DNA of 64,000 bases, taken from the sequence record OP310983.1; one strand, written 5' to 3'. The position numbers and the translations under genes were made by a program. Positions 8,012 through 25,584 of the stretch are shown piece by piece (within the stretch, counting starts at the first letter, position 1; every line of letters begins with the position of its first letter). A model generated the notes under the pieces. It was not told the DNA's origin, did not search any database, and worked only from the letters and a program-made list of their open reading frames with translations.

Positions 8012-8209
8012 TTAGATATTGAGGTTCTTCATTAAGCGAGCGTTTAAAGCTGCTGCAATATCAGCCTCAGTTAAAAACTCCCCATTCAGAGATGGGGAGC
8101 TGGTGGTGCCACCAAGCGATTGTAGAATTGCTTGAGTACCTAGTTTAACAGCAGCATGAAGAACAGCAATGTTCTGACCATGTGCTACATTATTACTTAG
8201 CTTTTGCAT
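8012..8209 (-). CDS. Small hypothetical protein
   Basis: 65 aa; AGGA SD; overlaps the end of the RNAP beta gene and fills the gap to the gp177-like gene. Confidence 0.6.
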   Translation of the reverse strand: MQKLSNNVAHGQNIAVLHAAVKLGTQAILQSLGGTTSSPSLNGEFLTEADIAAALNARLMKNLNI

Positions 8210-11200
8210 TAGTGTTTCCTCTATATACAGCTACAAGATGTTTTCCAGCTGCCCACAAGATACCAGTTGTTGTAGCAATGATTTTAGGAGATAGAACCAT
8301 TCGTTCTTCTACCGATGTATTACCGAATAGTAGATCAATATTACGGCCATCTTCAGTTTCATTACGTCCAGTCATTACACGGGAGAATACCGTTTTCATC
8401 TGGTTAGCTACTACGCCTTTATCTCCAACACCACATGGGATATCATGATCGATATACACTCGAATAATCATGTGGTCATATTCTAAGGCTCGTCCTTTCA
8501 CTCGATAGTTAGCATCTACTTGTCCAGTGAAAGTAGGTTCTTTCAATGATTTAGCTCGTTCAGCGCGTTGTTTATCTGACGTATTAGCTAATGCTTGTAA
8601 ACTTGGTGTCATATCGTCTATTTCACCATGATAGAAGCATTCAATCTTTGATACTGTACCTACGAGCTTAGCACGTGGCGAATATGCTGATAGTTTGCGT
8701 AATGTCTCAATAGATGCCTCGTCATATAGTGAGTGAGCAGCTGTTTCAGGATCTTCAATTATACATAGAATTGAATTTAAGTCGACATGATCCCCAACTT
8801 TCACCATATCTCGAATAGTCTGATCAAACCTAACATCGATATTCTTGATTGCAGTTGTTTGAGTATTTAACCTTTTAGCTAGGTCTTCAGAAATAACTGA
8901 ACCGTCTTCTAAAGTGTCAAGGTTATCATCAAATGCTACAACAGCCATACAACCGGCTTTCCATAATACTTGCCCAGGCGTATACCTATCTTCAGAGAAA
9001 TAACGTTTGTTATATGTGATAGTATCTCCACGTTTAAACTTATCACCTTTCTTTAATGAGGTAACAAGAATGTGTGGATAGTTAACACCAGCTGCTGTGC
9101 CATGAACTGTACCTAATTGATATCCAAATACATTACCATCGGCATATTTAACTTGGATACCATATTCATCAATAGCTACAACCTCACCATCTTGTTCTGC
9201 TGCTACAGCAAAGATAGAACTAGTCCTTTGGGCTATGATTTGTTCATAGCCTGTACGAACTGGTGTAACTGTATACCCATCAGCATAAATACCTTGCTGC
9301 TGCTGAATTGAGATAAAGTTAATTCGCTTAGGGTCATCATGTTCGGTTGCAACACCAAGCAGTGCACTAGTTGAGAGTAGTCTAGCTGGCCCATCTGTCT
9401 TTGGATCAAACATACGCGTAACACCACGCATGTTTACAAAGTTAGCATCAGGTACTAAGTAAGCAATAACACCAACGTCACCTGAGTCCACAGTTGATTC
9501 ACTAACCACACCAACATCCGCTTCACCGTAAATACGTGTACGTGCAACCATTGAAGTTGGACCGCGTCCACCATCTCCACGATAAGTCATCGCTTCTTGT
9601 TCACGGATATTTGCAATGGGGTTAGAATCTTCAATAGTGGCTACTGTCGGATCTTGTACAATCTTGCGCCAGATCACGTGTGGATCTAACTCGACAGTTT
9701 GCACTGACCCACCATTACGCATATTAAATACACGTACCGCTCTATTGAGTTCATTAAAAATAGCCCCTGCCATGCGCTCATAACCACGATAGCGCATATA
9801 TGCACCATCTACTTCTGCTGGACTCCAGTCGTTCGTTAATAACTCGACAGACCGATAAAGCAATCCTTCAAAAGTAGTTGGTTCACCCATCTCCTTGAGT
9901 AGACCCTCAGTGATTGGATCGACCCATGCTGAGAAGAGTGTATCAATATCACGTGTAAATCTATTACTTAATCCAGCTTCTTCAAGAACCCTGAAGTAAA
10001 CATCTCGTTTATTGAAATCATAAACAGAATAACGCCGCAGTGATTTATGATAACGTTTGAGTCCACTTAATACAAGCATTGCTTTATAATCAGCTCGATC
10101 AAATACTAGGATCTCATCAGCGAACGCTAATGTATAATCCGTACTATTGACAACAATCCTGGTACCACGCTGATGACGCTGATAATTAACATTCAACTTC
10201 TTAAGTAGATTGTTTAAGCCATGGTGATATGCTAAAATGAAACCTAATGGTAGCTCTTTACCACCAATTGACATTAGAATAGCTTCTAACGGCGCTTTGG
10301 TTAGATCTAAGCCAAGTATATCTGTAATGGTGCCAATAGGTTCTAGCTCATTACCTGTTTTCATGTAAAAGATGGAATTCTTATCTAACAAGATAGCATC
10401 AGTGCCATTGAACCCCACCATTATCAAATCATCAGTTTCATAATCTTCGATATGTAATCCTTGTTTTGCAAAGAATTCATTACGATCTTTGAAATTAAAA
10501 TAGAACACATTACGGTGATTATGGAAGCCTTTAAAAGCTGTTCCTAAAGTAGTGTACACCCTTGGTAGAACATAGTTGGATTGATCTAATTCAGCATAGG
10601 TAACTGAATGTACAGACATATCACTTCCATCTAATGCACGGTTGGTAATCGCTCTGATTAACCAATTATCAAAGTTGTTTTCAGCACGTTCAGATCTGGT
10701 CACAAAGGTCTTATTATAATAAGAGGTCAATGCAACTTTACGTGGATTAACTTTACGAATTGGAATATCAGCACGTTGTAAACGTTGGCGATATGTTACC
10801 CCATTAGACATGAACCTACCGTCATTATCAATGACAGGGATACGGAACATTACTTGTGAACTTCTACCACGAATAGGCTTTAATGTAACTTTGTGGATTT
10901 GGTAATGGTTACCAGAATCGCGTACAGTTTCAATTTTGTAATTAGTTACTGATACGCCTTGTTTCTGAACAGATAACACACTGTTTAAAATATCTTTCTT
11001 TAATAAGACCTTGTTGTATTTGCGTTGGATGGCTTTTAACTTACTACCCAACATTGATTTATCAACAATGGTTGGCTTATCTTCAAAAGTGGTGTCTTCT
11101 GGAATCTTAAGATCATCTGGATGATATTCCATCGCCTCAGCGATCGTCATAGGTTCTACTGATTCATCATTAGGATCGGTAAATGGATCAGGTAGACGAC

Positions 11201-12548
11201 GATACATAATCGAATCTTCTTGAGCTTGCTCGAATGTATTCGCAGAAATCATATTCACGCGATACATGTCGTATGCTTTAGCTCTAATGGCATCGATTAG
11301 TTTATCTTCTTCATCAACTTCAGTATTGATGAATAACTCATCTTCTGGTACATCTGTTACAATGAGTTCCTTCTCTTCTTTAATTTGGCGAGAAGGTGAA
11401 GATTCCAGTGGATCTTTTTCAATGATAAGCTTTGTTACCTCAAGATCACTTTCTGGTGGTGGGGTATATGTTACCTCAATTGCGCCAATATCAATTAAGT
11501 TAGTTAAATTGGTTGGGTCAAATTGAACATCATCAATAACATCAACTTCAGTTACTTCTTCTTCAACGTTATTAGACTCAACATCCTCAACCTCTTCTGC
11601 TTCACCTTCTTCATAACTAACCGGAGTTTCTTCATCAACAATAATATCTTCATTAAAGATAGGCGTATCTTCTTTAATTAATGAAGTATTACCTTGGTTA
11701 TATTCAACCATCGCTGATACTAGTGAAATAAGGCGCCTAGCTATTTGCTGGGTATCATAACCTTTATCATCTTTAATTTCTGGATCACGACGCCATTGAT
11801 CAAGCATCCCTAAGTTAATAACAAAGAATGAACTTTGTACACGGAATAAAAGATTAATGTTACCGTAATACTTAGCATCGATGACATTCATGAAAGAACT
11901 TTCACGATCATCAGAAACCCAGCGAACTAAATCAAATATATTTAGAATATCAGGTGTATTGAATTGATTAGCTAGATCTTGAGTTAAACCCCCTCGTAGT
12001 TTATTAAAAGAAGAAGGAGGTGGAACTAACTCAGGTAAGTGTACATCAATGAACTGGTTCCAACCAGGAAAACGTTCACATGCAGCCGCTACGCCACTCC
12101 AGAATGTACGCATGTCATTTGACCAACGGAACCATGTAGCTTTATAAGAAGCCATATAATTCCATTGAGGGTTAATTAAATTATAATTCATTACCAGAAT
12201 GTTCTGGTTTGATAATTTAAAACCGGTATCACTGCGTAAAGGTTTAAAGAAACGGTTCTGGCGGCGAAACTCTTGAATCATTGTTGCTGGGATATTTGAA
12301 GTCCTACGTGGATTACCTTCAAATGTAAGCATATCAGTAACATGCTCAATATATACTTTACCTTGATGTTTGGAGAATAATGGGTCTGTTTGACTAGGAC
12401 CCATTACTGCATTATTACCATCGAAGAACTGATAAATGGATTCGAAAGGTAGATCAAGTTTATTTAGAGCATGCAACTTAGGTGACTGAAGTTTAGCATA
12501 TTCGCGTACACTATAATTTTTCAGAAACTGTGTAATATTTAAGCGCAT
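8193..12548 (-). CDS. rpoB: Virion RNA polymerase beta-like subunit (phiKZ gp178-like)
   Basis: 1451 aa; beta motifs DSGDVG, ISIQQQQ, LEDGSVISE, GDKGVVANQMKTV. Confidence 0.92.
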   Translation of the reverse strand: MRLNITQFLKNYSVREYAKLQSPKLHALNKLDLPFESIYQFFDGNNAVMGPSQTDPLFSKHQGKVYIEHVTDMLTFEGNPRRTSNIPATMIQEFRRQNRFFKPLRSDTGFKLSNQNILVMNYNLINPQWNYMASYKATWFRWSNDMRTFWSGVAAACERFPGWNQFIDVHLPELVPPPSSFNKLRGGLTQDLANQFNTPDILNIFDLVRWVSDDRESSFMNVIDAKYYGNINLLFRVQSSFFVINLGMLDQWRRDPEIKDDKGYDTQQIARRLISLVSAMVEYNQGNTSLIKEDTPIFNEDIIVDEETPVSYEEGEAEEVEDVESNNVEEEVTEVDVIDDVQFDPTNLTNLIDIGAIEVTYTPPPESDLEVTKLIIEKDPLESSPSRQIKEEKELIVTDVPEDELFINTEVDEEDKLIDAIRAKAYDMYRVNMISANTFEQAQEDSIMYRRLPDPFTDPNDESVEPMTIAEAMEYHPDDLKIPEDTTFEDKPTIVDKSMLGSKLKAIQRKYNKVLLKKDILNSVLSVQKQGVSVTNYKIETVRDSGNHYQIHKVTLKPIRGRSSQVMFRIPVIDNDGRFMSNGVTYRQRLQRADIPIRKVNPRKVALTSYYNKTFVTRSERAENNFDNWLIRAITNRALDGSDMSVHSVTYAELDQSNYVLPRVYTTLGTAFKGFHNHRNVFYFNFKDRNEFFAKQGLHIEDYETDDLIMVGFNGTDAILLDKNSIFYMKTGNELEPIGTITDILGLDLTKAPLEAILMSIGGKELPLGFILAYHHGLNNLLKKLNVNYQRHQRGTRIVVNSTDYTLAFADEILVFDRADYKAMLVLSGLKRYHKSLRRYSVYDFNKRDVYFRVLEEAGLSNRFTRDIDTLFSAWVDPITEGLLKEMGEPTTFEGLLYRSVELLTNDWSPAEVDGAYMRYRGYERMAGAIFNELNRAVRVFNMRNGGSVQTVELDPHVIWRKIVQDPTVATIEDSNPIANIREQEAMTYRGDGGRGPTSMVARTRIYGEADVGVVSESTVDSGDVGVIAYLVPDANFVNMRGVTRMFDPKTDGPARLLSTSALLGVATEHDDPKRINFISIQQQQGIYADGYTVTPVRTGYEQIIAQRTSSIFAVAAEQDGEVVAIDEYGIQVKYADGNVFGYQLGTVHGTAAGVNYPHILVTSLKKGDKFKRGDTITYNKRYFSEDRYTPGQVLWKAGCMAVVAFDDNLDTLEDGSVISEDLAKRLNTQTTAIKNIDVRFDQTIRDMVKVGDHVDLNSILCIIEDPETAAHSLYDEASIETLRKLSAYSPRAKLVGTVSKIECFYHGEIDDMTPSLQALANTSDKQRAERAKSLKEPTFTGQVDANYRVKGRALEYDHMIIRVYIDHDIPCGVGDKGVVANQMKTVFSRVMTGRNETEDGRNIDLLFGNTSVEERMVLSPKIIATTTGILWAAGKHLVAVYRGNTNAKAK

Positions 12549-12736: not shown

Positions 12737-14179
12737 CGTTATGTTCAATAGAGTGCGTTAAACTCTATTCGCACCATTACGTGCAGCTCTAGCTCTCACT
12801 AGAAGACCAGACTATATCTTCACCTACAGCATCATCTGTTTAGGTGCTCTCCATTTCGGATCACTTGATCCTACGGGGCGCAACCCCCTAGTCGTTGAAC
12901 GTTCCACATATTACAGTTAAGTAATTTAGCGGCTTCGCTGCTGATTGTCTCTACCTAATCATTTTCAAACATTCGCACTTACTGTTTCCAGTTATGCTGT
13001 AGTTGATTAGTCTAACGAGAGTTTCCAGCAATTAGAAGAGTAAAACATATTCATTTCGGAATATGTGGACTTATGTACTTTACTGCATAATTTCTAAAAA
13101 TACAACCATGTTCAGATTTCCTTAGATGATAACCTAAGCAACCTGGTGTGACATTGAAAAACTCGGCGGCTTCCTTCAGTGAGTTTTTTATTAATACAGC
13201 TTCAGATTCTAATGATTCAATATGAATTCTGCGATGAGTTTCCACATACACGAGATTATCATTATTCCATGGTGTATCATCATCTTCGTATTTAAACTGT
13301 AATGATTGATTGTAAACAAGATTACTATTTTTAGTTAAACGTAATCTTAAAGTTTCACCATCTATACCAATTTCTCGGGCGCATTGTTCTATGCTGTAAT
13401 AACGAGTTATATTGGTAGTTATAAGGTCTCTGACCAAAACTGCTTTGGAATTATGAAGTCCATTGATGTGCGCATGCTCGCAATTTCTTTTACGGGTAGC
13501 CCATTCAAGGTTTGTTAAATCATTACAATCTTTAATTGCATTTAAATGATTCACATCAAGTGAATCAACATTACCTGGATATTTTAAGAAAGCTAGACTA
13601 AGAAGACGGTGCATTCCTACAATTGTACGTTTACCTACATCCGGCTGAACACCATACATCAGATAACCATCTTCATTCATGTATGGTGAGAGATGATTAC
13701 TGTTAACAGTGCTAAGTACTTGTCCAGCGCGATTAATCATGTATCTACTATATCCGGGAATATAGCAGTATTCTTTTATTAATGGATGAGTAAGTTCACC
13801 TTCAGGACACGCCCAAATAAAATTGGTTAGGCGATGATTACTTTTATTACCGTCTTTGTAAATAACGCGTAGTTTATGTAGTAACCGCATTGGTAATATG
13901 CAGTTTCTATACGTAACACCTAATACAACAGATAGTGACAAACCGTCAAACCATTCACCTGTTGTATGTTCAGGAAAAAGATGTTCGCCTTCATCACTAA
14001 CCATTGTGGTCAGTACGCGTTTACTTATACTTTCTCTAGCGATACCACTACAGCTGATTTCATACATGCCACCAGTATGTGGTATCTTTTTAAATCCTGG
14101 ATTTTCAATGAATTTTTTTAACATGGTTGTTATCCTATTTATTTCCTATAGGATAACTAGATATACAGTATTACAATTA
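12737..14179 (-). mobile_element. Group I intron (1443 nt) with HNH endonuclease in the RNAP beta-prime gene
   Basis: 5' exon ends in U (GAT), intron ends in G; core elements AATTGCTGGAAA (P), AATCAGCAG (Q), TTCAACGACTA (R), AAGATATAGTCT (S) at about 12800-13035; splicing restores GADFDGD. Confidence 0.93.
13051..14124 (-). CDS. Intron-encoded HNH homing endonuclease (gp179-like)
   Basis: NUMOD4-like segments, HRL...DVNHLNAIKDCNDLTNLEW...N HNH motif, C-terminal NUMOD1/IENR1-like HTH repeats. Confidence 0.9.
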   Translation of the reverse strand: MLKKFIENPGFKKIPHTGGMYEISCSGIARESISKRVLTTMVSDEGEHLFPEHTTGEWFDGLSLSVVLGVTYRNCILPMRLLHKLRVIYKDGNKSNHRLTNFIWACPEGELTHPLIKEYCYIPGYSRYMINRAGQVLSTVNSNHLSPYMNEDGYLMYGVQPDVGKRTIVGMHRLLSLAFLKYPGNVDSLDVNHLNAIKDCNDLTNLEWATRKRNCEHAHINGLHNSKAVLVRDLITTNITRYYSIEQCAREIGIDGETLRLRLTKNSNLVYNQSLQFKYEDDDTPWNNDNLVYVETHRRIHIESLESEAVLIKNSLKEAAEFFNVTPGCLGYHLRKSEHGCIFRNYAVKYISPHIPK

Positions 14180-15646
14180 ATCCGCCCCCAATGGCGCGAG
14201 AATAGAAGGAGAGATGGATACTGAGTCATGCCACTGGGCTGGTTTATTTAATTCAAACACAGGGAATTCTAAGGCTGGTTCCAACGTATCATCACGTTCC
14301 CATTGATCATTTAACGGATAACGTAATTCACCCACTACGGTTGTTTTAACATACATCTTACAGGGGATAGAGCTATTGTAGTTTTCTACAGGATATCGTG
14401 TAACAAACGCTGAGTTTGTTCGCCACATACTTAATCCACTAAGGTAAACTAATTCGGCATAAGTAATAGGTCTAACAAATTTCTTATTTAGATTAGTAGG
14501 TAACTCATCGATGTTGCGGAATATTTTAAAATTCTGTTTATCATCAACGTAAATAAGGGCTAGATAATGATCAGCAATTTCAATTGCACGTGAACGTTTT
14601 TCAATGACATCTAACTCATTGATGATTTGTTCTTGCCCTTCAGGAGTTCCCCATAAATCCATATCTTCGTTAGAGATATCGACCCATTCTAAACGTAGTG
14701 TTTTCTTATTGATGAGCTGTACAGTGTTAGTAACTGTATCAAACACTTCACCAACTACACCTTGCCTTAGTGCAAAGATTGTACGCGGTGCAACTGAACG
14801 AGCTGCTTGATGTAAGCCAACTACGGCATCTTTGAATGTTGGTCGATTAGGTGAATCAAGATCAGCAGCATTAGTATCTAGCGAACTAATGACGTTACGT
14901 GTACCATTGGCAATACGACGGGATGCCCATTTAGATTGAATGTATCCACGTTTACCGGATAGCAGTCGTTCATAATGTTCATAAATAGCTAATACGGTGT
15001 TTTGCATTGCTACTCGTTTGCGATCATAGATACTCAAGTCATCATTTGGTCCAAAGCTATCAGGTACACCAAACGACTGATTTAATAGATATCTATAATG
15101 TTCATTGACCTCATCCATCTCAACACGATTATTCTCATCAATCTCTGCATCACGATAAGCAGCAGGTGTTACAATCATGTCTTTAAAAATACAGTTATCT
15201 TTATATTTTTCGATTAATTGTAACCTTGATAGCCGAACCCCTGACTTAGTGGTCCCAAAGTCAATTCGTTTCCAGTTATCAAAAAAGAATGTATAACCAG
15301 TTTTACCAGTTAGTTCATCGGCGCGGATAAAATCTTTAATAGATTCGTCAAATACTGCAAATGCCTTACCAAGAATAATTTCTTCATAGAAAGCTTTTAA
15401 TTTAATTAAGTTTCGATATACAGCTGGATGGATAAGTTCTAAACCTAAATGAATATATCCAAATAAACTCTCACGATCAGTTGATCCAACTCTTCCAAAA
15501 ATGGAAACAGAGAACAAACCATCTTCATGAAAGTTACCACCTAAACCTTCAAATATCTCATGACTCTTTACTTGACCTAAGAACTTTAATTGTTCTTTAG
15601 TAGGAATAAGTAAAGAAATATTAAAAGGAACTAATGCCTTCTTCAT
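14180..15646 (-). CDS. rpoC: Virion RNAP beta-prime subunit, exon 1 (phiKZ gp180-like)
   Basis: 489 codons; GLFSVSIFG, LLSGKRGYIQ, RNVISS, VTRYP; ends LGAD; spliced product 550 aa. Confidence 0.92.
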
Positions 15647-15721
15647 TTTCTATTTTCCTATTTTGGTAATACTAAGTTAAACAACGATATGATACTTTAC
15701 TAATCGTCAATGGAGTTTAAT

Positions 15722-24482
<8,761 letters not shown>

Positions 24483-24540: not shown

Positions 24541-24846
24541 ATGTCTCTACTTAAAAAGATCGGTCTAGCTCTAATTGGATCAGAAGGACGTAAGGAAGTT
24601 TTTGAACAAGAGTTAACTAAACTATCAAATACTAATGCAGTTATTGATCAAATGGTGATTAATGTACTGGGTAGTAAGAAGAAGTTAAATGACTTCCTAA
24701 TTGAAGCTGAAGAAATTGATAATAAGAAACTAGGCTTCATTAAAAATCGAGCCGAACTTATTAAACTAGTCAAATCTAAATATTCACAAGACCCTCGGGT
24801 TGCCGATGTTGTAGTGTCACTTTACATTGGTGGTTTCATTTATTGA
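24541..24846 (+). CDS. Hypothetical protein
   Basis: 101 aa, AGGT SD. Confidence 0.75.
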   Translation: MSLLKKIGLALIGSEGRKEVFEQELTKLSNTNAVIDQMVINVLGSKKKLNDFLIEAEEIDNKKLGFIKNRAELIKLVKSKYSQDPRVADVVVSLYIGGFIY

Positions 24847-24853
24847 GGTAAGT

Positions 24854-25546
24854 ATGTCTAAACCTAATCTTGAGTGGTTAGCTTCCTTAGAAAGTAAAGA
24901 AGCTAAAAGTACAGTAGATGCTTCTGATATGGATAATGACCAAAAGGAAGGTAGTGATAAATCACAACATGACGAAGCTTCTGAAACTGAGAAGAATATA
25001 ACTGCAACTGATATACAAATTGCAATTGAAGAATATGCGCGTATCCGTGCATTAACCACTACTAAAGATCTTCCAGCTGACCCTGAACCAGGCGATACTT
25101 ATCATGTAAATGGGGTAGATTGGATTTATCAAGAAGATGGTGGATGGGTAACTATGCAAGGTATTTATGGCCATGAACATTTTGATGAAAATGGTCTAAA
25201 TATTGAAGCAAGTGGCATTGACCAGAAATCAGGTGCAACTAAACGTTATGTGGTAACTGGTTATAATGCTCAGACTAACCCAGCTGCTATGCCTGGTGAT
25301 AACCTGACTGAATGCGTTATCCTAATGCAGAATGGACTTGTTCCAGAAGTTGGTGTAAATGGCCTAACTGCTGACTGTCTAATTAAAATCGTTAAAGATT
25401 TATTTGAAGGTTACCAAGCAGGCCCATTTGCATGTGAAGAGAATCAGGTAGTGATTAATTCAATGGACCGTGCTCTTAGTGCAATTCATCAACGCTTCGT
25501 ACGACGTAAAGAACAGGGTACTGAAGGTACTTATAGTGGTAATTAA
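24854..25546 (+). CDS. tad1: Tad1-family anti-defence signal sponge with N-terminal extension
   Basis: GAGGT SD, ATG 24854; C-terminal about 125 aa has G.K.Y, MQNG...GVNG, IVKD...YQAGPFACEEN...AL...R..R...GTEGT, the Tad1 pattern as I recall it. Confidence 0.8.
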   Translation: MSKPNLEWLASLESKEAKSTVDASDMDNDQKEGSDKSQHDEASETEKNITATDIQIAIEEYARIRALTTTKDLPADPEPGDTYHVNGVDWIYQEDGGWVTMQGIYGHEHFDENGLNIEASGIDQKSGATKRYVVTGYNAQTNPAAMPGDNLTECVILMQNGLVPEVGVNGLTADCLIKIVKDLFEGYQAGPFACEENQVVINSMDRALSAIHQRFVRRKEQGTEGTYSGN

Positions 25547-25552
25547 CATATT

Positions 25553-25570
25553 GCCTCCCTTCGGGGAGGC
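25553..25570 (+). terminator. Hairpin terminator
   Basis: GCCTCCC-TTCG-GGGAGGC TTT. Confidence 0.85.
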
Positions 25571-25584
25571 TTTATATCGTAATG

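What the first reader, a model, noticed from the sequence alone, without database searches (positions are those of the whole stretch)
24854..25546. Tad1-like immune-signal sponge fused to an acidic N-terminal extension
Seen: the last about 125 aa (25160-25546) read HEHFDENGLNIEASGIDQKSGATKRY...MQNG...GVNG...IVKD...YQAGPFACEEN...AL...RFVRRKEQGTEGT. Established: Tad1 proteins share FQ.G...G, IV.DRL..FQAGPF...EN..A...EEAL...R...R...V.GT and sequester Thoeris gcADPR and some CBASS cyclic oligonucleotides. Nucleus shielding does not block signalling-based abortive defence, so a sponge would fill that gap. Unusual: about 100 extra N-terminal aa, with an acidic disordered tract and a DLPADPEPGDTYHVNGVDWIY..GGW module. 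Inference: the extension may localise or package the sponge, since the gene lies at the end of the virion block. I recall the phiKZ orthologue (orf184) being reported as Tad1; the role of the extension is the open question.
Basis: partly seen in the sequence, partly recalled or inferred. Interest (0 to 1): 0.82.

Follow-up and report, generated by a model that had tools for sequence, protein, structure and literature searches.

The report
Capsid-packaged Tad1 sponge of phiKZ-like phage
This gene is the already described gp184/Tad1 of a phiKZ-type jumbo phage: a small protein predicted to soak up bacterial alarm molecules, joined to an N-terminal piece that anchors it inside the phage head so it is delivered with the DNA.

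Summary
The ORF is real (24854-25546, +, 230 aa). It has its own RBS, a hairpin terminator, and dN/dS of 0.05-0.15 in every segment. The window is a Pseudomonas phiKZ-like phage, and the protein is 96% identical to phiKZ gp184 (PDB 8Y6V chain I).

Residues about 109-230 form a Tad1 domain. They match solved Tad1 chains by sequence (E about 1e-6). An AlphaFold model (pLDDT 94-98) has Tad1 structures as its 20 best PDB matches. The gcADPR/dinucleotide pocket residues are conserved. The cyclic-trinucleotide arginine is Glu195 and the hexamer contacts are not conserved.

The N-terminal 108 residues comprise a conserved W-containing N-motif, an acidic tract, a helix and a small beta module. The beta module superposes at 1.5 A on the 34 residues of gp184 seen in the phiKZ capsid.

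Published work already reports gp184 as a vertex-binding minor capsid protein, cut by the head protease, injected into the next host, non-essential, and called Tad1.

What I add:
- a likely cleavage junction at GHE108|H109;
- anchor-only orthologues (Psa21, RVTF4) that stop exactly there;
- other architectures at the same locus;
- a predicted loss of trinucleotide binding.

Verdict: correct, already known, modest interest.

The parts
15710..22432 (+). Upstream co-oriented gene, orthologue of phiKZ gp181 (2240 aa; tail-associated endolysin / cell-puncturing protein)
   Evidence: ORF list. The same gene order occurs in phiKZ, where PHIKZ181 is annotated 'tail-associated endolysin'.
22488..24482 (+). 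gp182 orthologue (664 aa), virion structural protein
   Evidence: phrog_3181 and phrog_20401 'virion structural protein'. Syntenic with PHIKZ182, 201phi2-1 gp277 and phiPA3 gp214.
24541..24846 (+). gp183 orthologue (101 aa), unknown function
   Evidence: phrog_27341. Its position matches PHIKZ183.
24843..24846 (+). Shine-Dalgarno GAGG, 5 nt before the ATG
   Evidence: Read directly from the sequence.
24854..25546 (+). CDS of the gp184/Tad1 orthologue (230 aa plus stop)
   Evidence: 96% identical to PDB 8y6v_I 'gp184' and to PHIKZ184. 100% identical in phages PA02, kmuB and others. dN/dS is 0.09 against an 83%-identical homologue.
24854..24892 (+). N-motif, residues 1-13 (MSKPNLEWLASLE): short helix with a conserved Trp, ending in SLE, which fits the head-protease motif. 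Proposed capsid-targeting propeptide.
   Evidence: Helix 7-13 in the model. The W plus [SG]-x-E pattern is conserved in all architectures, including the anchor-only and minimal forms. The function is inferred by analogy to the T4 CTS (PMC9026906).
24893..25003 (+). Acidic, predicted disordered tract, residues 14-50 (11 D/E, 5 K/R), containing further S/A-x-E sites (SKE16, ASE44)
   Evidence: Composition. pLDDT is below 50 for residues 20-41.
25004..25042 (+). Short helix, residues 51-63, containing AIE59 (S/A-x-E)
   Evidence: Helix 51-61 in the model. Motif position.
25043..25168 (+). Beta module / capsid anchor, residues 64-105 (…DLPADPEPGDTYHVNGVDWIYQEDGGWVTMQGIY)
   Evidence: Strands 65-67, 82-85, 88-92 and 98-100, with pLDDT 80-88. 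It superposes on the 34 modelled residues of 8y6v_I at rmsd 1.5 A with 97% identity. The paper places these residues between gp86 and hexamer 1 under the vertex. It exists as a stand-alone 91-92-aa protein in Psa21 and RVTF4.
25169..25177 (+). Junction G106-H107-E108: proposed head-protease (gp175-type) cleavage site that frees the Tad1 domain
   Evidence: pLDDT trough at 105-110. An [SAG]-x-E lies 10-40 residues upstream of the K130 equivalent in 25 of 25 clade members, against 14±2.5 in shuffles. The Psa21 and RVTF4 orthologues end at ...GLYGH(V)* exactly here. Cleavage at this exact site is an inference.
25178..25543 (+). Tad1 (Acb2/Tad1 hairpin, PF24729) domain, residues 109-230: beta sheet plus two long helices. 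Pocket residues are Y187, N197, R214, R218; the lid is GTEGT 222-226.
   Evidence: phmmer against Tad1 PDB chains. Foldseek TMt 0.70-0.76 against 8smd, 8kbf, 8kbb and 7uaw. pLDDT 94-98. Residue mapping.
25553..25580 (+). Intrinsic-terminator-like hairpin (GCCTCCC-TTCG-GGGAGGC) plus T-rich tail, closing the gp181-gp184 gene string
   Evidence: One such site was found in the 1.5-kb scan, about the number expected by chance, so its placement rather than its count is the argument.

Best explanation
The gene encodes the gp184/Tad1 protein of a phiKZ-type jumbo phage. It is a cyclic-nucleotide 'sponge' built as cargo on a capsid-delivery handle.

Proposed sequence of events:
1. The protein is made together with the virion genes gp181-gp183.
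2. Its N-terminal 108 residues take it into the prohead. The conserved N-motif and acidic tract probably act as a targeting propeptide.
3. The 34-40-residue beta module wedges between gp86 and the first hexamer under each vertex. With five vertex-binding complexes per vertex, I infer about 55-60 copies per head.
4. The head protease (the gp175 orthologue, which cuts after S/A(/G)-x-E) trims the propeptide. Most likely it also cuts after G106-H107-E108.
5. That cut releases a 122-residue Tad1 domain into the capsid interior.
6. The Tad1 domain is ejected with the DNA into the next host. There it is present before any phage gene is expressed and before the phage nucleus exists.
7. It binds Thoeris gcADPR, and probably some CBASS cyclic dinucleotides, in the conserved dimer-interface pocket (Y187/N197/R214/R218).

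It probably does not bind cyclic trinucleotides, because the phosphate-binding Arg is Glu195 and the hexamer contacts are not conserved.

Shown by others: capsid location, proteolytic processing, injection, non-essentiality. Shown here: domain identity, fold, boundaries, residue conservation, comparative architectures. Inferred: the exact cleavage site, the role of the N-motif, copy number, ligand range.
For: Identity: 96% to PDB 8y6v_I gp184 and to PHIKZ184, with the same gp181-184 order.

Tad1 domain:
- phmmer E 4e-7 to 4e-6 against 8kbb, 8kbh and 7uav.
- AF2 model with pLDDT 94-98.
- The 20 best PDB fold matches are all Tad1.
- PF24729 Acb2_Tad1_hairpin on homologues.
- Pocket residues CbTad1 F82/N92/R109/R113 correspond to Y187/N197/R214/R218. 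N and the first R are invariant, and the second R is present in 145 of 150 relatives.

Anchor:
- The model's beta module matches the 34 residues modelled in the capsid at rmsd 1.5 A.
- The capsid paper describes gp184 in the inner vertex-binding complex and states that it is cleaved by gp175.

Delivery:
- gp184 was validated as an injected protein.
- The TnSeq preprint says the N-terminus is wedged, the C-terminus is liberated and injected, and the gene is non-essential.

Junction:
- pLDDT trough at 105-110.
- [SAG]xE conserved upstream of the domain in 25 of 25 clade members against 14±2.5 in shuffles.
- The Psa21 and RVTF4 orthologues stop exactly at GLYGH.
- The liberated piece would have the length of free-standing Tad1.

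Selection: dN/dS is 0.05-0.15 in all three segments.

CTN site:
- CbTad1 R90/T97 (CmTad1 R88/T95) correspond to E195/N202.
- A phiKZ nlp1 deletion, made by replacing nlp1 only (so tad1 is presumed intact), is sensitive to a cA3/NucC CBASS. It is rescued by the cA3 sponge Acb2.
Against: - I could not read any direct binding or plating data for phiKZ gp184. Li et al. 2024 (Nature) is not held, its preprint does not mention phiKZ, and one paper presents the assignment as an AntiDefenseFinder hit.
- The exact experimentally determined cleavage site (Thomas et al. 2012) is not held.
- A review gives the phiKZ motif as S/A-x-E, under which GHE would be non-canonical. AIE59 or ASE44 could be the mapped sites.
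- About 60 sponge subunits per infecting virion is a small buffering capacity.
- Tad1-family homologues are reported to have diversified ligand specificities, so the ligand is not fixed by the fold.
- The oligomeric state could not be modelled here.
Confidence: 0.85

Rival explanations
1. gp184 is essentially a structural cement protein of the capsid vertex. The Tad1-like domain is a vestige, or it serves a structural or inner-body role and has no immune-signal binding.
For: It is resolved as part of the vertex-binding complex. It was picked up as an inner-body interactor. GenBank calls it 'structural protein'. No direct ligand data were accessible.
Against: Only 34 N-terminal residues are ordered in the shell, and the gene is dispensable at 37 °C. 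The ligand-pocket residues N197 and R214 are invariant, and R218 is nearly so, across 150 relatives including free-standing sponges. The Tad1 segment has dN/dS of 0.07-0.10. Psa21 and RVTF4 keep the anchor without the domain, so the domain is not needed for the anchor's capsid role.
Confidence: 0.05
2. The sponge works mainly after de novo synthesis in the cytoplasm of the infected cell. Packaging is a minor or secondary route. The extension then mainly serves capsid stability, and the full-length uncleaved protein is the active cytoplasmic form.
For: About 55-60 copies per virion (inferred from five complexes per vertex) is little sponge. Free-standing Tad1 proteins in other phages work by expression. 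The gene has its own RBS, and the protein would be abundant late in infection.
Against: It sits in a virion-gene string ending in a terminator, so it is probably expressed late, whereas Thoeris/CBASS signalling must be blocked early. Injection has been demonstrated. Three different delivery-type N-extensions are conserved on Tad1 at this locus.
Confidence: 0.15
3. The domain is a genuine sponge, but its ligand is not gcADPR. It could be, for example, only CBASS dinucleotides or another nucleotide signal. In that case 'anti-Thoeris' would be the wrong label for this clade.
For: Tad1/Tad2/Acb2 homologues have been reported with diverse specificities, including Pycsar signals. CDN spectra differ among Tad1 homologues. 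The loop and lid residues that differ between CbTad1 and CmTad1 also differ here: R57 is L162 and L119 is E224.
Against: The four residues whose mutation abolishes gcADPR binding in CbTad1 are conserved.
Confidence: 0.2

Closest known systems
phiKZ gp184 (PHIKZ184; PDB 8Y6V chain I; called Tad1 in recent phiKZ literature)
   Same: 96% identical over all 230 residues, with the same gp181-184 gene order and the same length. This is the orthologue in a sister phage; the window is 100% identical to PA02/kmuB-type isolates.
   Different: Nine substitutions. Seven are in the N-terminal 75 residues and two are in the Tad1 domain (I177L, F215L). None is at a pocket residue.
Free-standing Tad1 sponges (CbTad1 7UAV/7UAW/8SMD, CmTad1 8KBB-D, SBS Tad1)
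   Same: Same fold: an antiparallel sheet plus two helices, TMt 0.70-0.76. The gcADPR/CDN pocket residues and the GxEGT lid are conserved.
   Different: - Only 21-26% identity.
- Carries a 108-residue N-terminal delivery handle.
- The CTN-binding Arg/Thr are replaced by Glu/Asn.
- The CmTad1 hexamer-interface residues are not conserved.
- Delivered as a virion protein rather than only expressed.
201phi2-1 gp280 / phiPA3 gp217 (phrog_23843)
   Same: Syntenic (after the gp182 homologue). The Tad1 domain is 53-58% identical. They have the same N-motif, an acidic tract and an [SAG]xE site before the domain. gp280 was found in virions by mass spectrometry.
   Different: They lack the beta anchor module, so they are probably packaged as soluble or inner-body cargo rather than wedged into the shell.
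Psa21 gp249 / RVTF4 XDJ14874 (91-92 aa 'virion structural protein')
   Same: Syntenic. They have the N-motif, a linker and the beta module (41-45% identical over residues 64-107).
   Different: They have no Tad1 domain at all. The protein stops exactly at the phiKZ junction (…GLYGH*).
T4 internal proteins with capsid-targeting sequence (IPI/IPII/IPIII; IPI* is an injected anti-restriction protein)
   Same: The logic is the same: a short N-terminal propeptide ends at the prohead-protease motif, the mature cargo is released inside the head, and it is injected to counter host defence before gene expression.
   Different: There is no sequence relationship. Here there is an additional shell-anchoring module and a long acidic tract. 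The targeting function of the N-motif is untested.

Membership tests
Tad1 (Acb2/Tad1 hairpin, PF24729) | Significant sequence similarity to experimentally characterised Tad1 proteins | tested here: met
   phmmer E 4.2e-7 (8kbb CmTad1) and 3e-6 (7uav/8kbh CbTad1), covering residues 117-226. PF24729 is precomputed on homologues. The local Pfam copy gave no hit.
Tad1 (Acb2/Tad1 hairpin, PF24729) | Fold: N-terminal antiparallel beta sheet followed by two long C-terminal helices | tested here: met
   The AF2 model has strands 116-122, 129-135 and 153-158 and helices 173-189 and 195-220, with pLDDT 94-98. The top 20 Foldseek hits are all Tad1, prob 1.0, TMt 0.70-0.76.
Tad1 (Acb2/Tad1 hairpin, PF24729) | gcADPR/CDN pocket residues (CbTad1 F82, N92, R109, R113) and C-terminal lid | tested here: met
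   The corresponding residues are Y187, N197, R214 and R218. N197 and R214 are invariant and R218 is present in 145 of 150 relatives. Position 187 is F or Y in 145 of 150. The GTEGT lid motif is conserved.
Tad1 (Acb2/Tad1 hairpin, PF24729) | Cyclic-trinucleotide site (CbTad1 R90/T97 = CmTad1 R88/T95) and hexamer interface | tested here: not met
   The site residues are E195 and N202. The interface positions K96/Q98/E99/M102/W103/K106 correspond to S203/D205/R206/S209/A210/Q213. In the phiKZ clade, position 195 is E or D in 21 of 24 sequences. This is a feature of some Tad1 proteins and does not define the family.
Tad1 (Acb2/Tad1 hairpin, PF24729) | Binds and sequesters gcADPR; rescues phage from Thoeris | not testable with these tools
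   This needs biochemistry or plating.
phiKZ minor capsid protein gp184 (vertex-binding complex) | Orthology: sequence identity and synteny with PHIKZ184 | tested here: met
   96.1% identity over 230 aa. Same order: gp181 (2240 aa), gp182 (664), gp183 (101), gp184, then small genes and thymidylate kinase.
phiKZ minor capsid protein gp184 (vertex-binding complex) | Beta-strand segment that inserts between gp86 and hexamer 1 | tested here: met
   The predicted beta module superposes on the 34 modelled residues of 8y6v_I at rmsd 1.5 A with 97% identity, consistent with including the single A75T difference. Location is as described.
phiKZ minor capsid protein gp184 (vertex-binding complex) | Processing by the gp175-type prohead protease after S/A(/G)-x-E | tested here: inconclusive
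   Motifs are present at SLE13, SKE16, ASE44, AIE59 and GHE108 and are conserved in position. The review gives S/A-x-E. The G variant is from my memory of Thomas et al. 2012.
T4-type capsid-targeting-sequence cargo | Short N-terminal propeptide, sufficient for head targeting, ending at a protease site | tested here: inconclusive
   A conserved N-motif (a Trp at residues 6-13, then [SG]-x-E) is shared by all four architectures. It is not found on other ORFs of the window. Sufficiency for targeting is untested.

The most novel reading that the evidence does not exclude
The locus records how a jumbo phage turned an expressed anti-defence protein into a pre-loaded one. Under this reading, a pre-existing small vertex protein (N-motif plus beta anchor, as still seen alone in Psa21 and RVTF4) captured a Tad1 gene by fusion at a protease-cleavable junction. 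Relatives use only the about 14-residue N-motif (Noxifer) or the N-motif plus acidic tract (201phi2-1, phiPA3) to package the same cargo. The N-motif would then be a Chimalliviridae capsid-targeting sequence usable for any cargo. This Tad1 clade would be a dimeric sponge restricted to gcADPR and dinucleotides, having lost the trinucleotide site.
Probability: 0.4. Interest if true: 0.5.

Novelty: already known. Interest (0 to 1): 0.28.

Why it matters
Nucleus-forming jumbo phages are protected from DNA-targeting defences, but only once the nucleus exists. They are not protected from signalling systems such as Thoeris and CBASS. A sponge carried in the virion and released at ejection covers the earliest and most vulnerable minutes.

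This has already been recognised for phiKZ gp184/Tad1. The value of this window is therefore confirmatory. It shows the gene is conserved in circulating P. aeruginosa phiKZ-like phages, several of which are candidate therapeutic phages.

The comparative details found here give concrete, cheap experiments on how proteins are addressed to jumbo-phage heads and on which host systems this sponge can and cannot blunt. Those details are the exact junction, the anchor-only and minimal orthologues, and the loss of the cA3 site.

Tried and rejected
- The local Pfam scan of the full protein and of each half gave no Tad1 family hit, although the precomputed tables list PF24729. I relied on PDB sequence and fold matches instead.
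- The first AlphaFold run, with a 20-sequence alignment, was too poor (pLDDT 57.6) and was not used for fold search. The 150-sequence alignment fixed this.
- I tried to read Li et al. 2024 (PMC12159963), Thomas et al. 2012 (PMC3323674) and Thomas & Black 2013 (PMC3719823). None is held. The capsid paper's supplements are not held either. The mapped cleavage site and any direct phiKZ Tad1 assays therefore remain unverified.
- I looked for the N-motif on other ORFs of the window as a general targeting signal. Only this gene has it.
- I looked for paralogues of the three segments in the window. There are none.
- I considered NOXIFER_199 as a split-off anchor gene. Its sequence is unrelated.
- I considered the longer TTG start at 24827 (239 aa). 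I rejected it because it overlaps the upstream gene, lacks an RBS, and disagrees with the deposited gp184.

Full report
**1. What is in the sequence**

An ORF runs from the ATG at 24854 to the TAA at 25544-25546 on the + strand, giving 230 aa.
- A GAGG lies 5 nt upstream of the ATG and overlaps the stop codon of the preceding 101-aa gene.
- A GC-rich hairpin (GCCTCCC-TTCG-GGGAGGC) with a T-rich tail follows at 25553-25580.
- The N-terminal 108 residues carry 24 acidic and 9 basic residues.
- Against an 83%-identical homologue from a metagenomic contig, dN/dS is 0.11 for residues 1-63, 0.05 for 64-108 and 0.10 for 109-230.

All three parts are therefore under purifying selection, and this is a real gene.

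**2. Where the window comes from**

The region is 100% identical in DNA to Pseudomonas phages PA02, kmuB and others. It is 96-99% identical to about 49 phiKZ-like genomes.
- The protein is 96.1% identical to PHIKZ184 and to PDB 8Y6V chain I 'gp184'.
- Gene order matches phiKZ: a 2240-aa gp181 orthologue, a 664-aa gp182 orthologue (PHROG 'virion structural protein'), a 101-aa gp183 orthologue, this gene, a terminator, then small genes and thymidylate kinase.

**3. The C-terminal domain is Tad1**

- phmmer of residues 108-230 against all PDB sequences finds only gp184 itself and Tad1 chains: CmTad1 8KBB at E 4e-7 and CbTad1 7UAV/8KBH at about 3e-6.
- A whole-library HMMER search finds 2037 representative relatives at E ≤ 1e-3.
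- With 150 of these relatives as the alignment, AlphaFold2 gives pLDDT 94-98 for residues 121-230.
- The 20 best Foldseek matches in the PDB are all Tad1 structures, with prob 1.0 and TMt 0.70-0.76.
- Precomputed Pfam hits on homologues are PF24729, Acb2_Tad1_hairpin. The local Pfam copy returned nothing.

I mapped the residues that Li et al. (preprint) showed to be required in CbTad1:

| CbTad1 feature | CbTad1 / CmTad1 residues | This protein | Conservation |
|---|---|---|---|
| gcADPR/dinucleotide pocket | F82, N92, R109, R113 | Y187, N197, R214, R218 | N197 and R214 invariant; R218 in 145 of 150 relatives |
| Cyclic-trinucleotide site | R90/T97 (CmTad1 R88/T95) | E195, N202 | Position 195 is E or D in 21 of 24 sequences of the phiKZ clade |
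| CmTad1 hexamer contacts | K96/Q98/E99/M102/W103/K106 | S203/D205/R206/S209/A210/Q213 | Not conserved |

I therefore predict a gcADPR (and possibly CDN) sponge that does not bind cA3 and may not form a hexamer. One published observation fits this. A phiKZ nlp1 deletion was made by replacing nlp1 only, so tad1 is presumed intact. It is sensitive to a cA3/NucC CBASS and is rescued by the cA3 sponge Acb2.

**4. The extension**

The model and the alignments divide residues 1-108 into five parts:

| Residues | Feature |
|---|---|
| 1-13 | Short helix with a conserved Trp, ending in SLE |
| 14-50 | Acidic tract, pLDDT below 50 |
| 51-61 | Helix |
| 64-105 | Small beta module, pLDDT 80-88 |
| 105-110 | Low-confidence linker containing G106-H107-E108 |

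- The deposited capsid chain 8y6v_I has only 34 modelled residues. They superpose on my model at rmsd 1.5 A with 97% identity.
- A single mismatch in that segment fits the A75T difference. The ordered piece in the capsid is therefore the beta module.
- The capsid paper describes gp184 as the only beta-rich member of the inner 'vertex-binding complex'. It sits between gp86 and the centre of hexamer 1. The paper says gp184 is cleaved by the head protease gp175 and that most of it is unresolved.

**5. What the literature already says**

- gp184 was validated as an injected protein using tagged virions and translation-blocked cells (PMC10449902).
- The phiKZ TnSeq preprint lists 'Thoeris anti-defense protein 1 (Tad1, gp184)' as non-essential. 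[quoted passage not shown]
- A 2026 review says the same.
- AntiDefenseFinder reports Tad1 as the only known anti-defence gene of phiKZ.

Both the identification and the role of the extension are therefore already in print.

Caveat: the primary citation for the Tad1 label is Li et al., Nature 2024. It is not held, and its 2023 preprint does not mention phiKZ. I could not confirm that phiKZ gp184 itself was assayed for binding or plating.

**6. What I can add**

(a) *The junction.* An [SAG]-x-E motif lies 10-40 residues upstream of the invariant K130 equivalent in 25 of 25 members of the jumbo-phage clade. Composition-preserving shuffles give 14±2.5. The sequences are related, so this is supportive rather than a p-value.
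- In the window protein this motif is GHE108, sitting in the pLDDT trough.
- Cutting there would free 122 residues, the size of free-standing Tad1.
- A review gives the phiKZ protease motif as S/A-x-E. My memory of the original paper is S/A/G-x-E. Under the narrow motif, AIE59 or ASE44 would be the sites.

(b) *Natural dissection of the protein.* tblastn against cultured phages, followed by inspection of the syntenic locus, shows four architectures:

| Phage | Protein | Architecture |
|---|---|---|
| phiKZ type | 230 aa | N-motif + acidic tract + beta anchor + Tad1 |
| 201phi2-1 gp280 / phiPA3 gp217 | 199 / 189 aa | N-motif + acidic tract + Tad1, no anchor. gp280 was found in virions by mass spectrometry. 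|
| Noxifer_200 | 134 aa | MTEAMKWLEQNGPE followed directly by Tad1 |
| Psa21 gp249 / RVTF4 | 91-92 aa | N-motif + linker + beta anchor. The protein ends …GLYGH* exactly at the phiKZ junction, and no Tad1 was detected elsewhere in those genomes. UniProt names the Psa21 protein 'virion structural protein'. |

This supports three points: a domain boundary at 107/108, a modular handle-plus-cargo design, and the N-motif as the common packaging determinant. The last point is an inference by analogy to the T4 capsid-targeting sequence.

(c) *Loss of the trinucleotide site*, as described in section 3.

**7. Mechanism and confidence**

I am confident (about 0.85) that this is a virion-delivered Tad1-type sponge. 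The steps I regard as shown, with sources:
- capsid location;
- processing;
- injection;
- dispensability;
- domain identity, pocket conservation and boundaries (this work).

Inferred steps:
- Cleavage occurs exactly after E108 (about 0.6).
- The N-motif is a targeting propeptide (about 0.5).
- There are about 55-60 copies per head. This comes from five complexes per vertex, assuming one gp184 per complex.
- The ligand range is gcADPR, with or without CDNs but not CTNs (about 0.6).

Rival readings are listed separately with their refutations: a purely structural protein, action mainly after de novo synthesis, and a different ligand.

**8. Verdict**

The finding rediscovers a described protein, so its novelty is 'already known'. 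Interest is modest and comes from the comparative details, which are cheap to test.

Noticed in passing
L007:2805-3821 (Burkholderia phage FLC9 gp131, LC667451): A 338-aa protein fuses an N-terminal cyclophilin-type peptidyl-prolyl isomerase (PF00160, E 2.5e-44) to a C-terminal Tad1 domain. It is not at the gp182-syntenic locus. The purpose of joining a PPIase to a sponge is unexplained.
   Followed up: partly
L001:2357-2632 (Psa21) and L002:2357-2635 (RVTF4): These are anchor-only orthologues of gp184 (91-92 aa) at the syntenic position. They end exactly at the GLYGH junction. No Tad1 domain was detected elsewhere in those genomes at E ≤ 1e-3.
   Followed up: yes
L006:3468-3872 (Noxifer_200): This is a minimal architecture at the syntenic locus: a 14-residue W-containing N-motif ending in GPE, followed directly by a Tad1 domain (134 aa). 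It could be a natural 'CTS-cargo' form.
   Followed up: partly
phiPA3-like genomes (NC_028999, PP968062, OU343167): tblastn reports two matching places per genome in phiPA3-type phages. Only the syntenic one (gp217) was inspected. The second may be another Tad1-like or beta-module-containing gene.
   Followed up: no
46 hit list (P0022-P0167): About a third of the 150 best Tad1-domain representatives carry unrelated N-terminal extensions of 50-360 aa, and others carry C-terminal ones. Outside the jumbo-phage clade these extensions lack the N-motif and the acidic tract. Fusion of Tad1 to other modules is therefore common and largely unexplored.
   Followed up: partly
window 13051-14124 (-): A 357-aa HNH endonuclease ORF (phrog_59, E 6e-30) sits next to the virion RNA polymerase beta-subunit gene (14177-15646, -). 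On its other side is a 1451-aa minus-strand ORF (8193-12548) that I did not identify. The HNH ORF looks like a homing-endonuclease insertion.
   Followed up: no
window 25043-25168 (beta module); The beta module (PxPGDxYxV…W.Y…GxW) gives weak Foldseek hits to virion structural, tail-fibre and collagen-repeat proteins of other phages. From memory, a similar short motif recurs in many phage fibre proteins. It may be a widespread small adaptor module.
   Followed up: no
The local Pfam-A copy returns no hit for this protein or its homologues, whereas the precomputed tables list PF24729 (Acb2_Tad1_hairpin, 'weak'). A Pfam-only annotation pipeline would miss this gene.
   Followed up: partly
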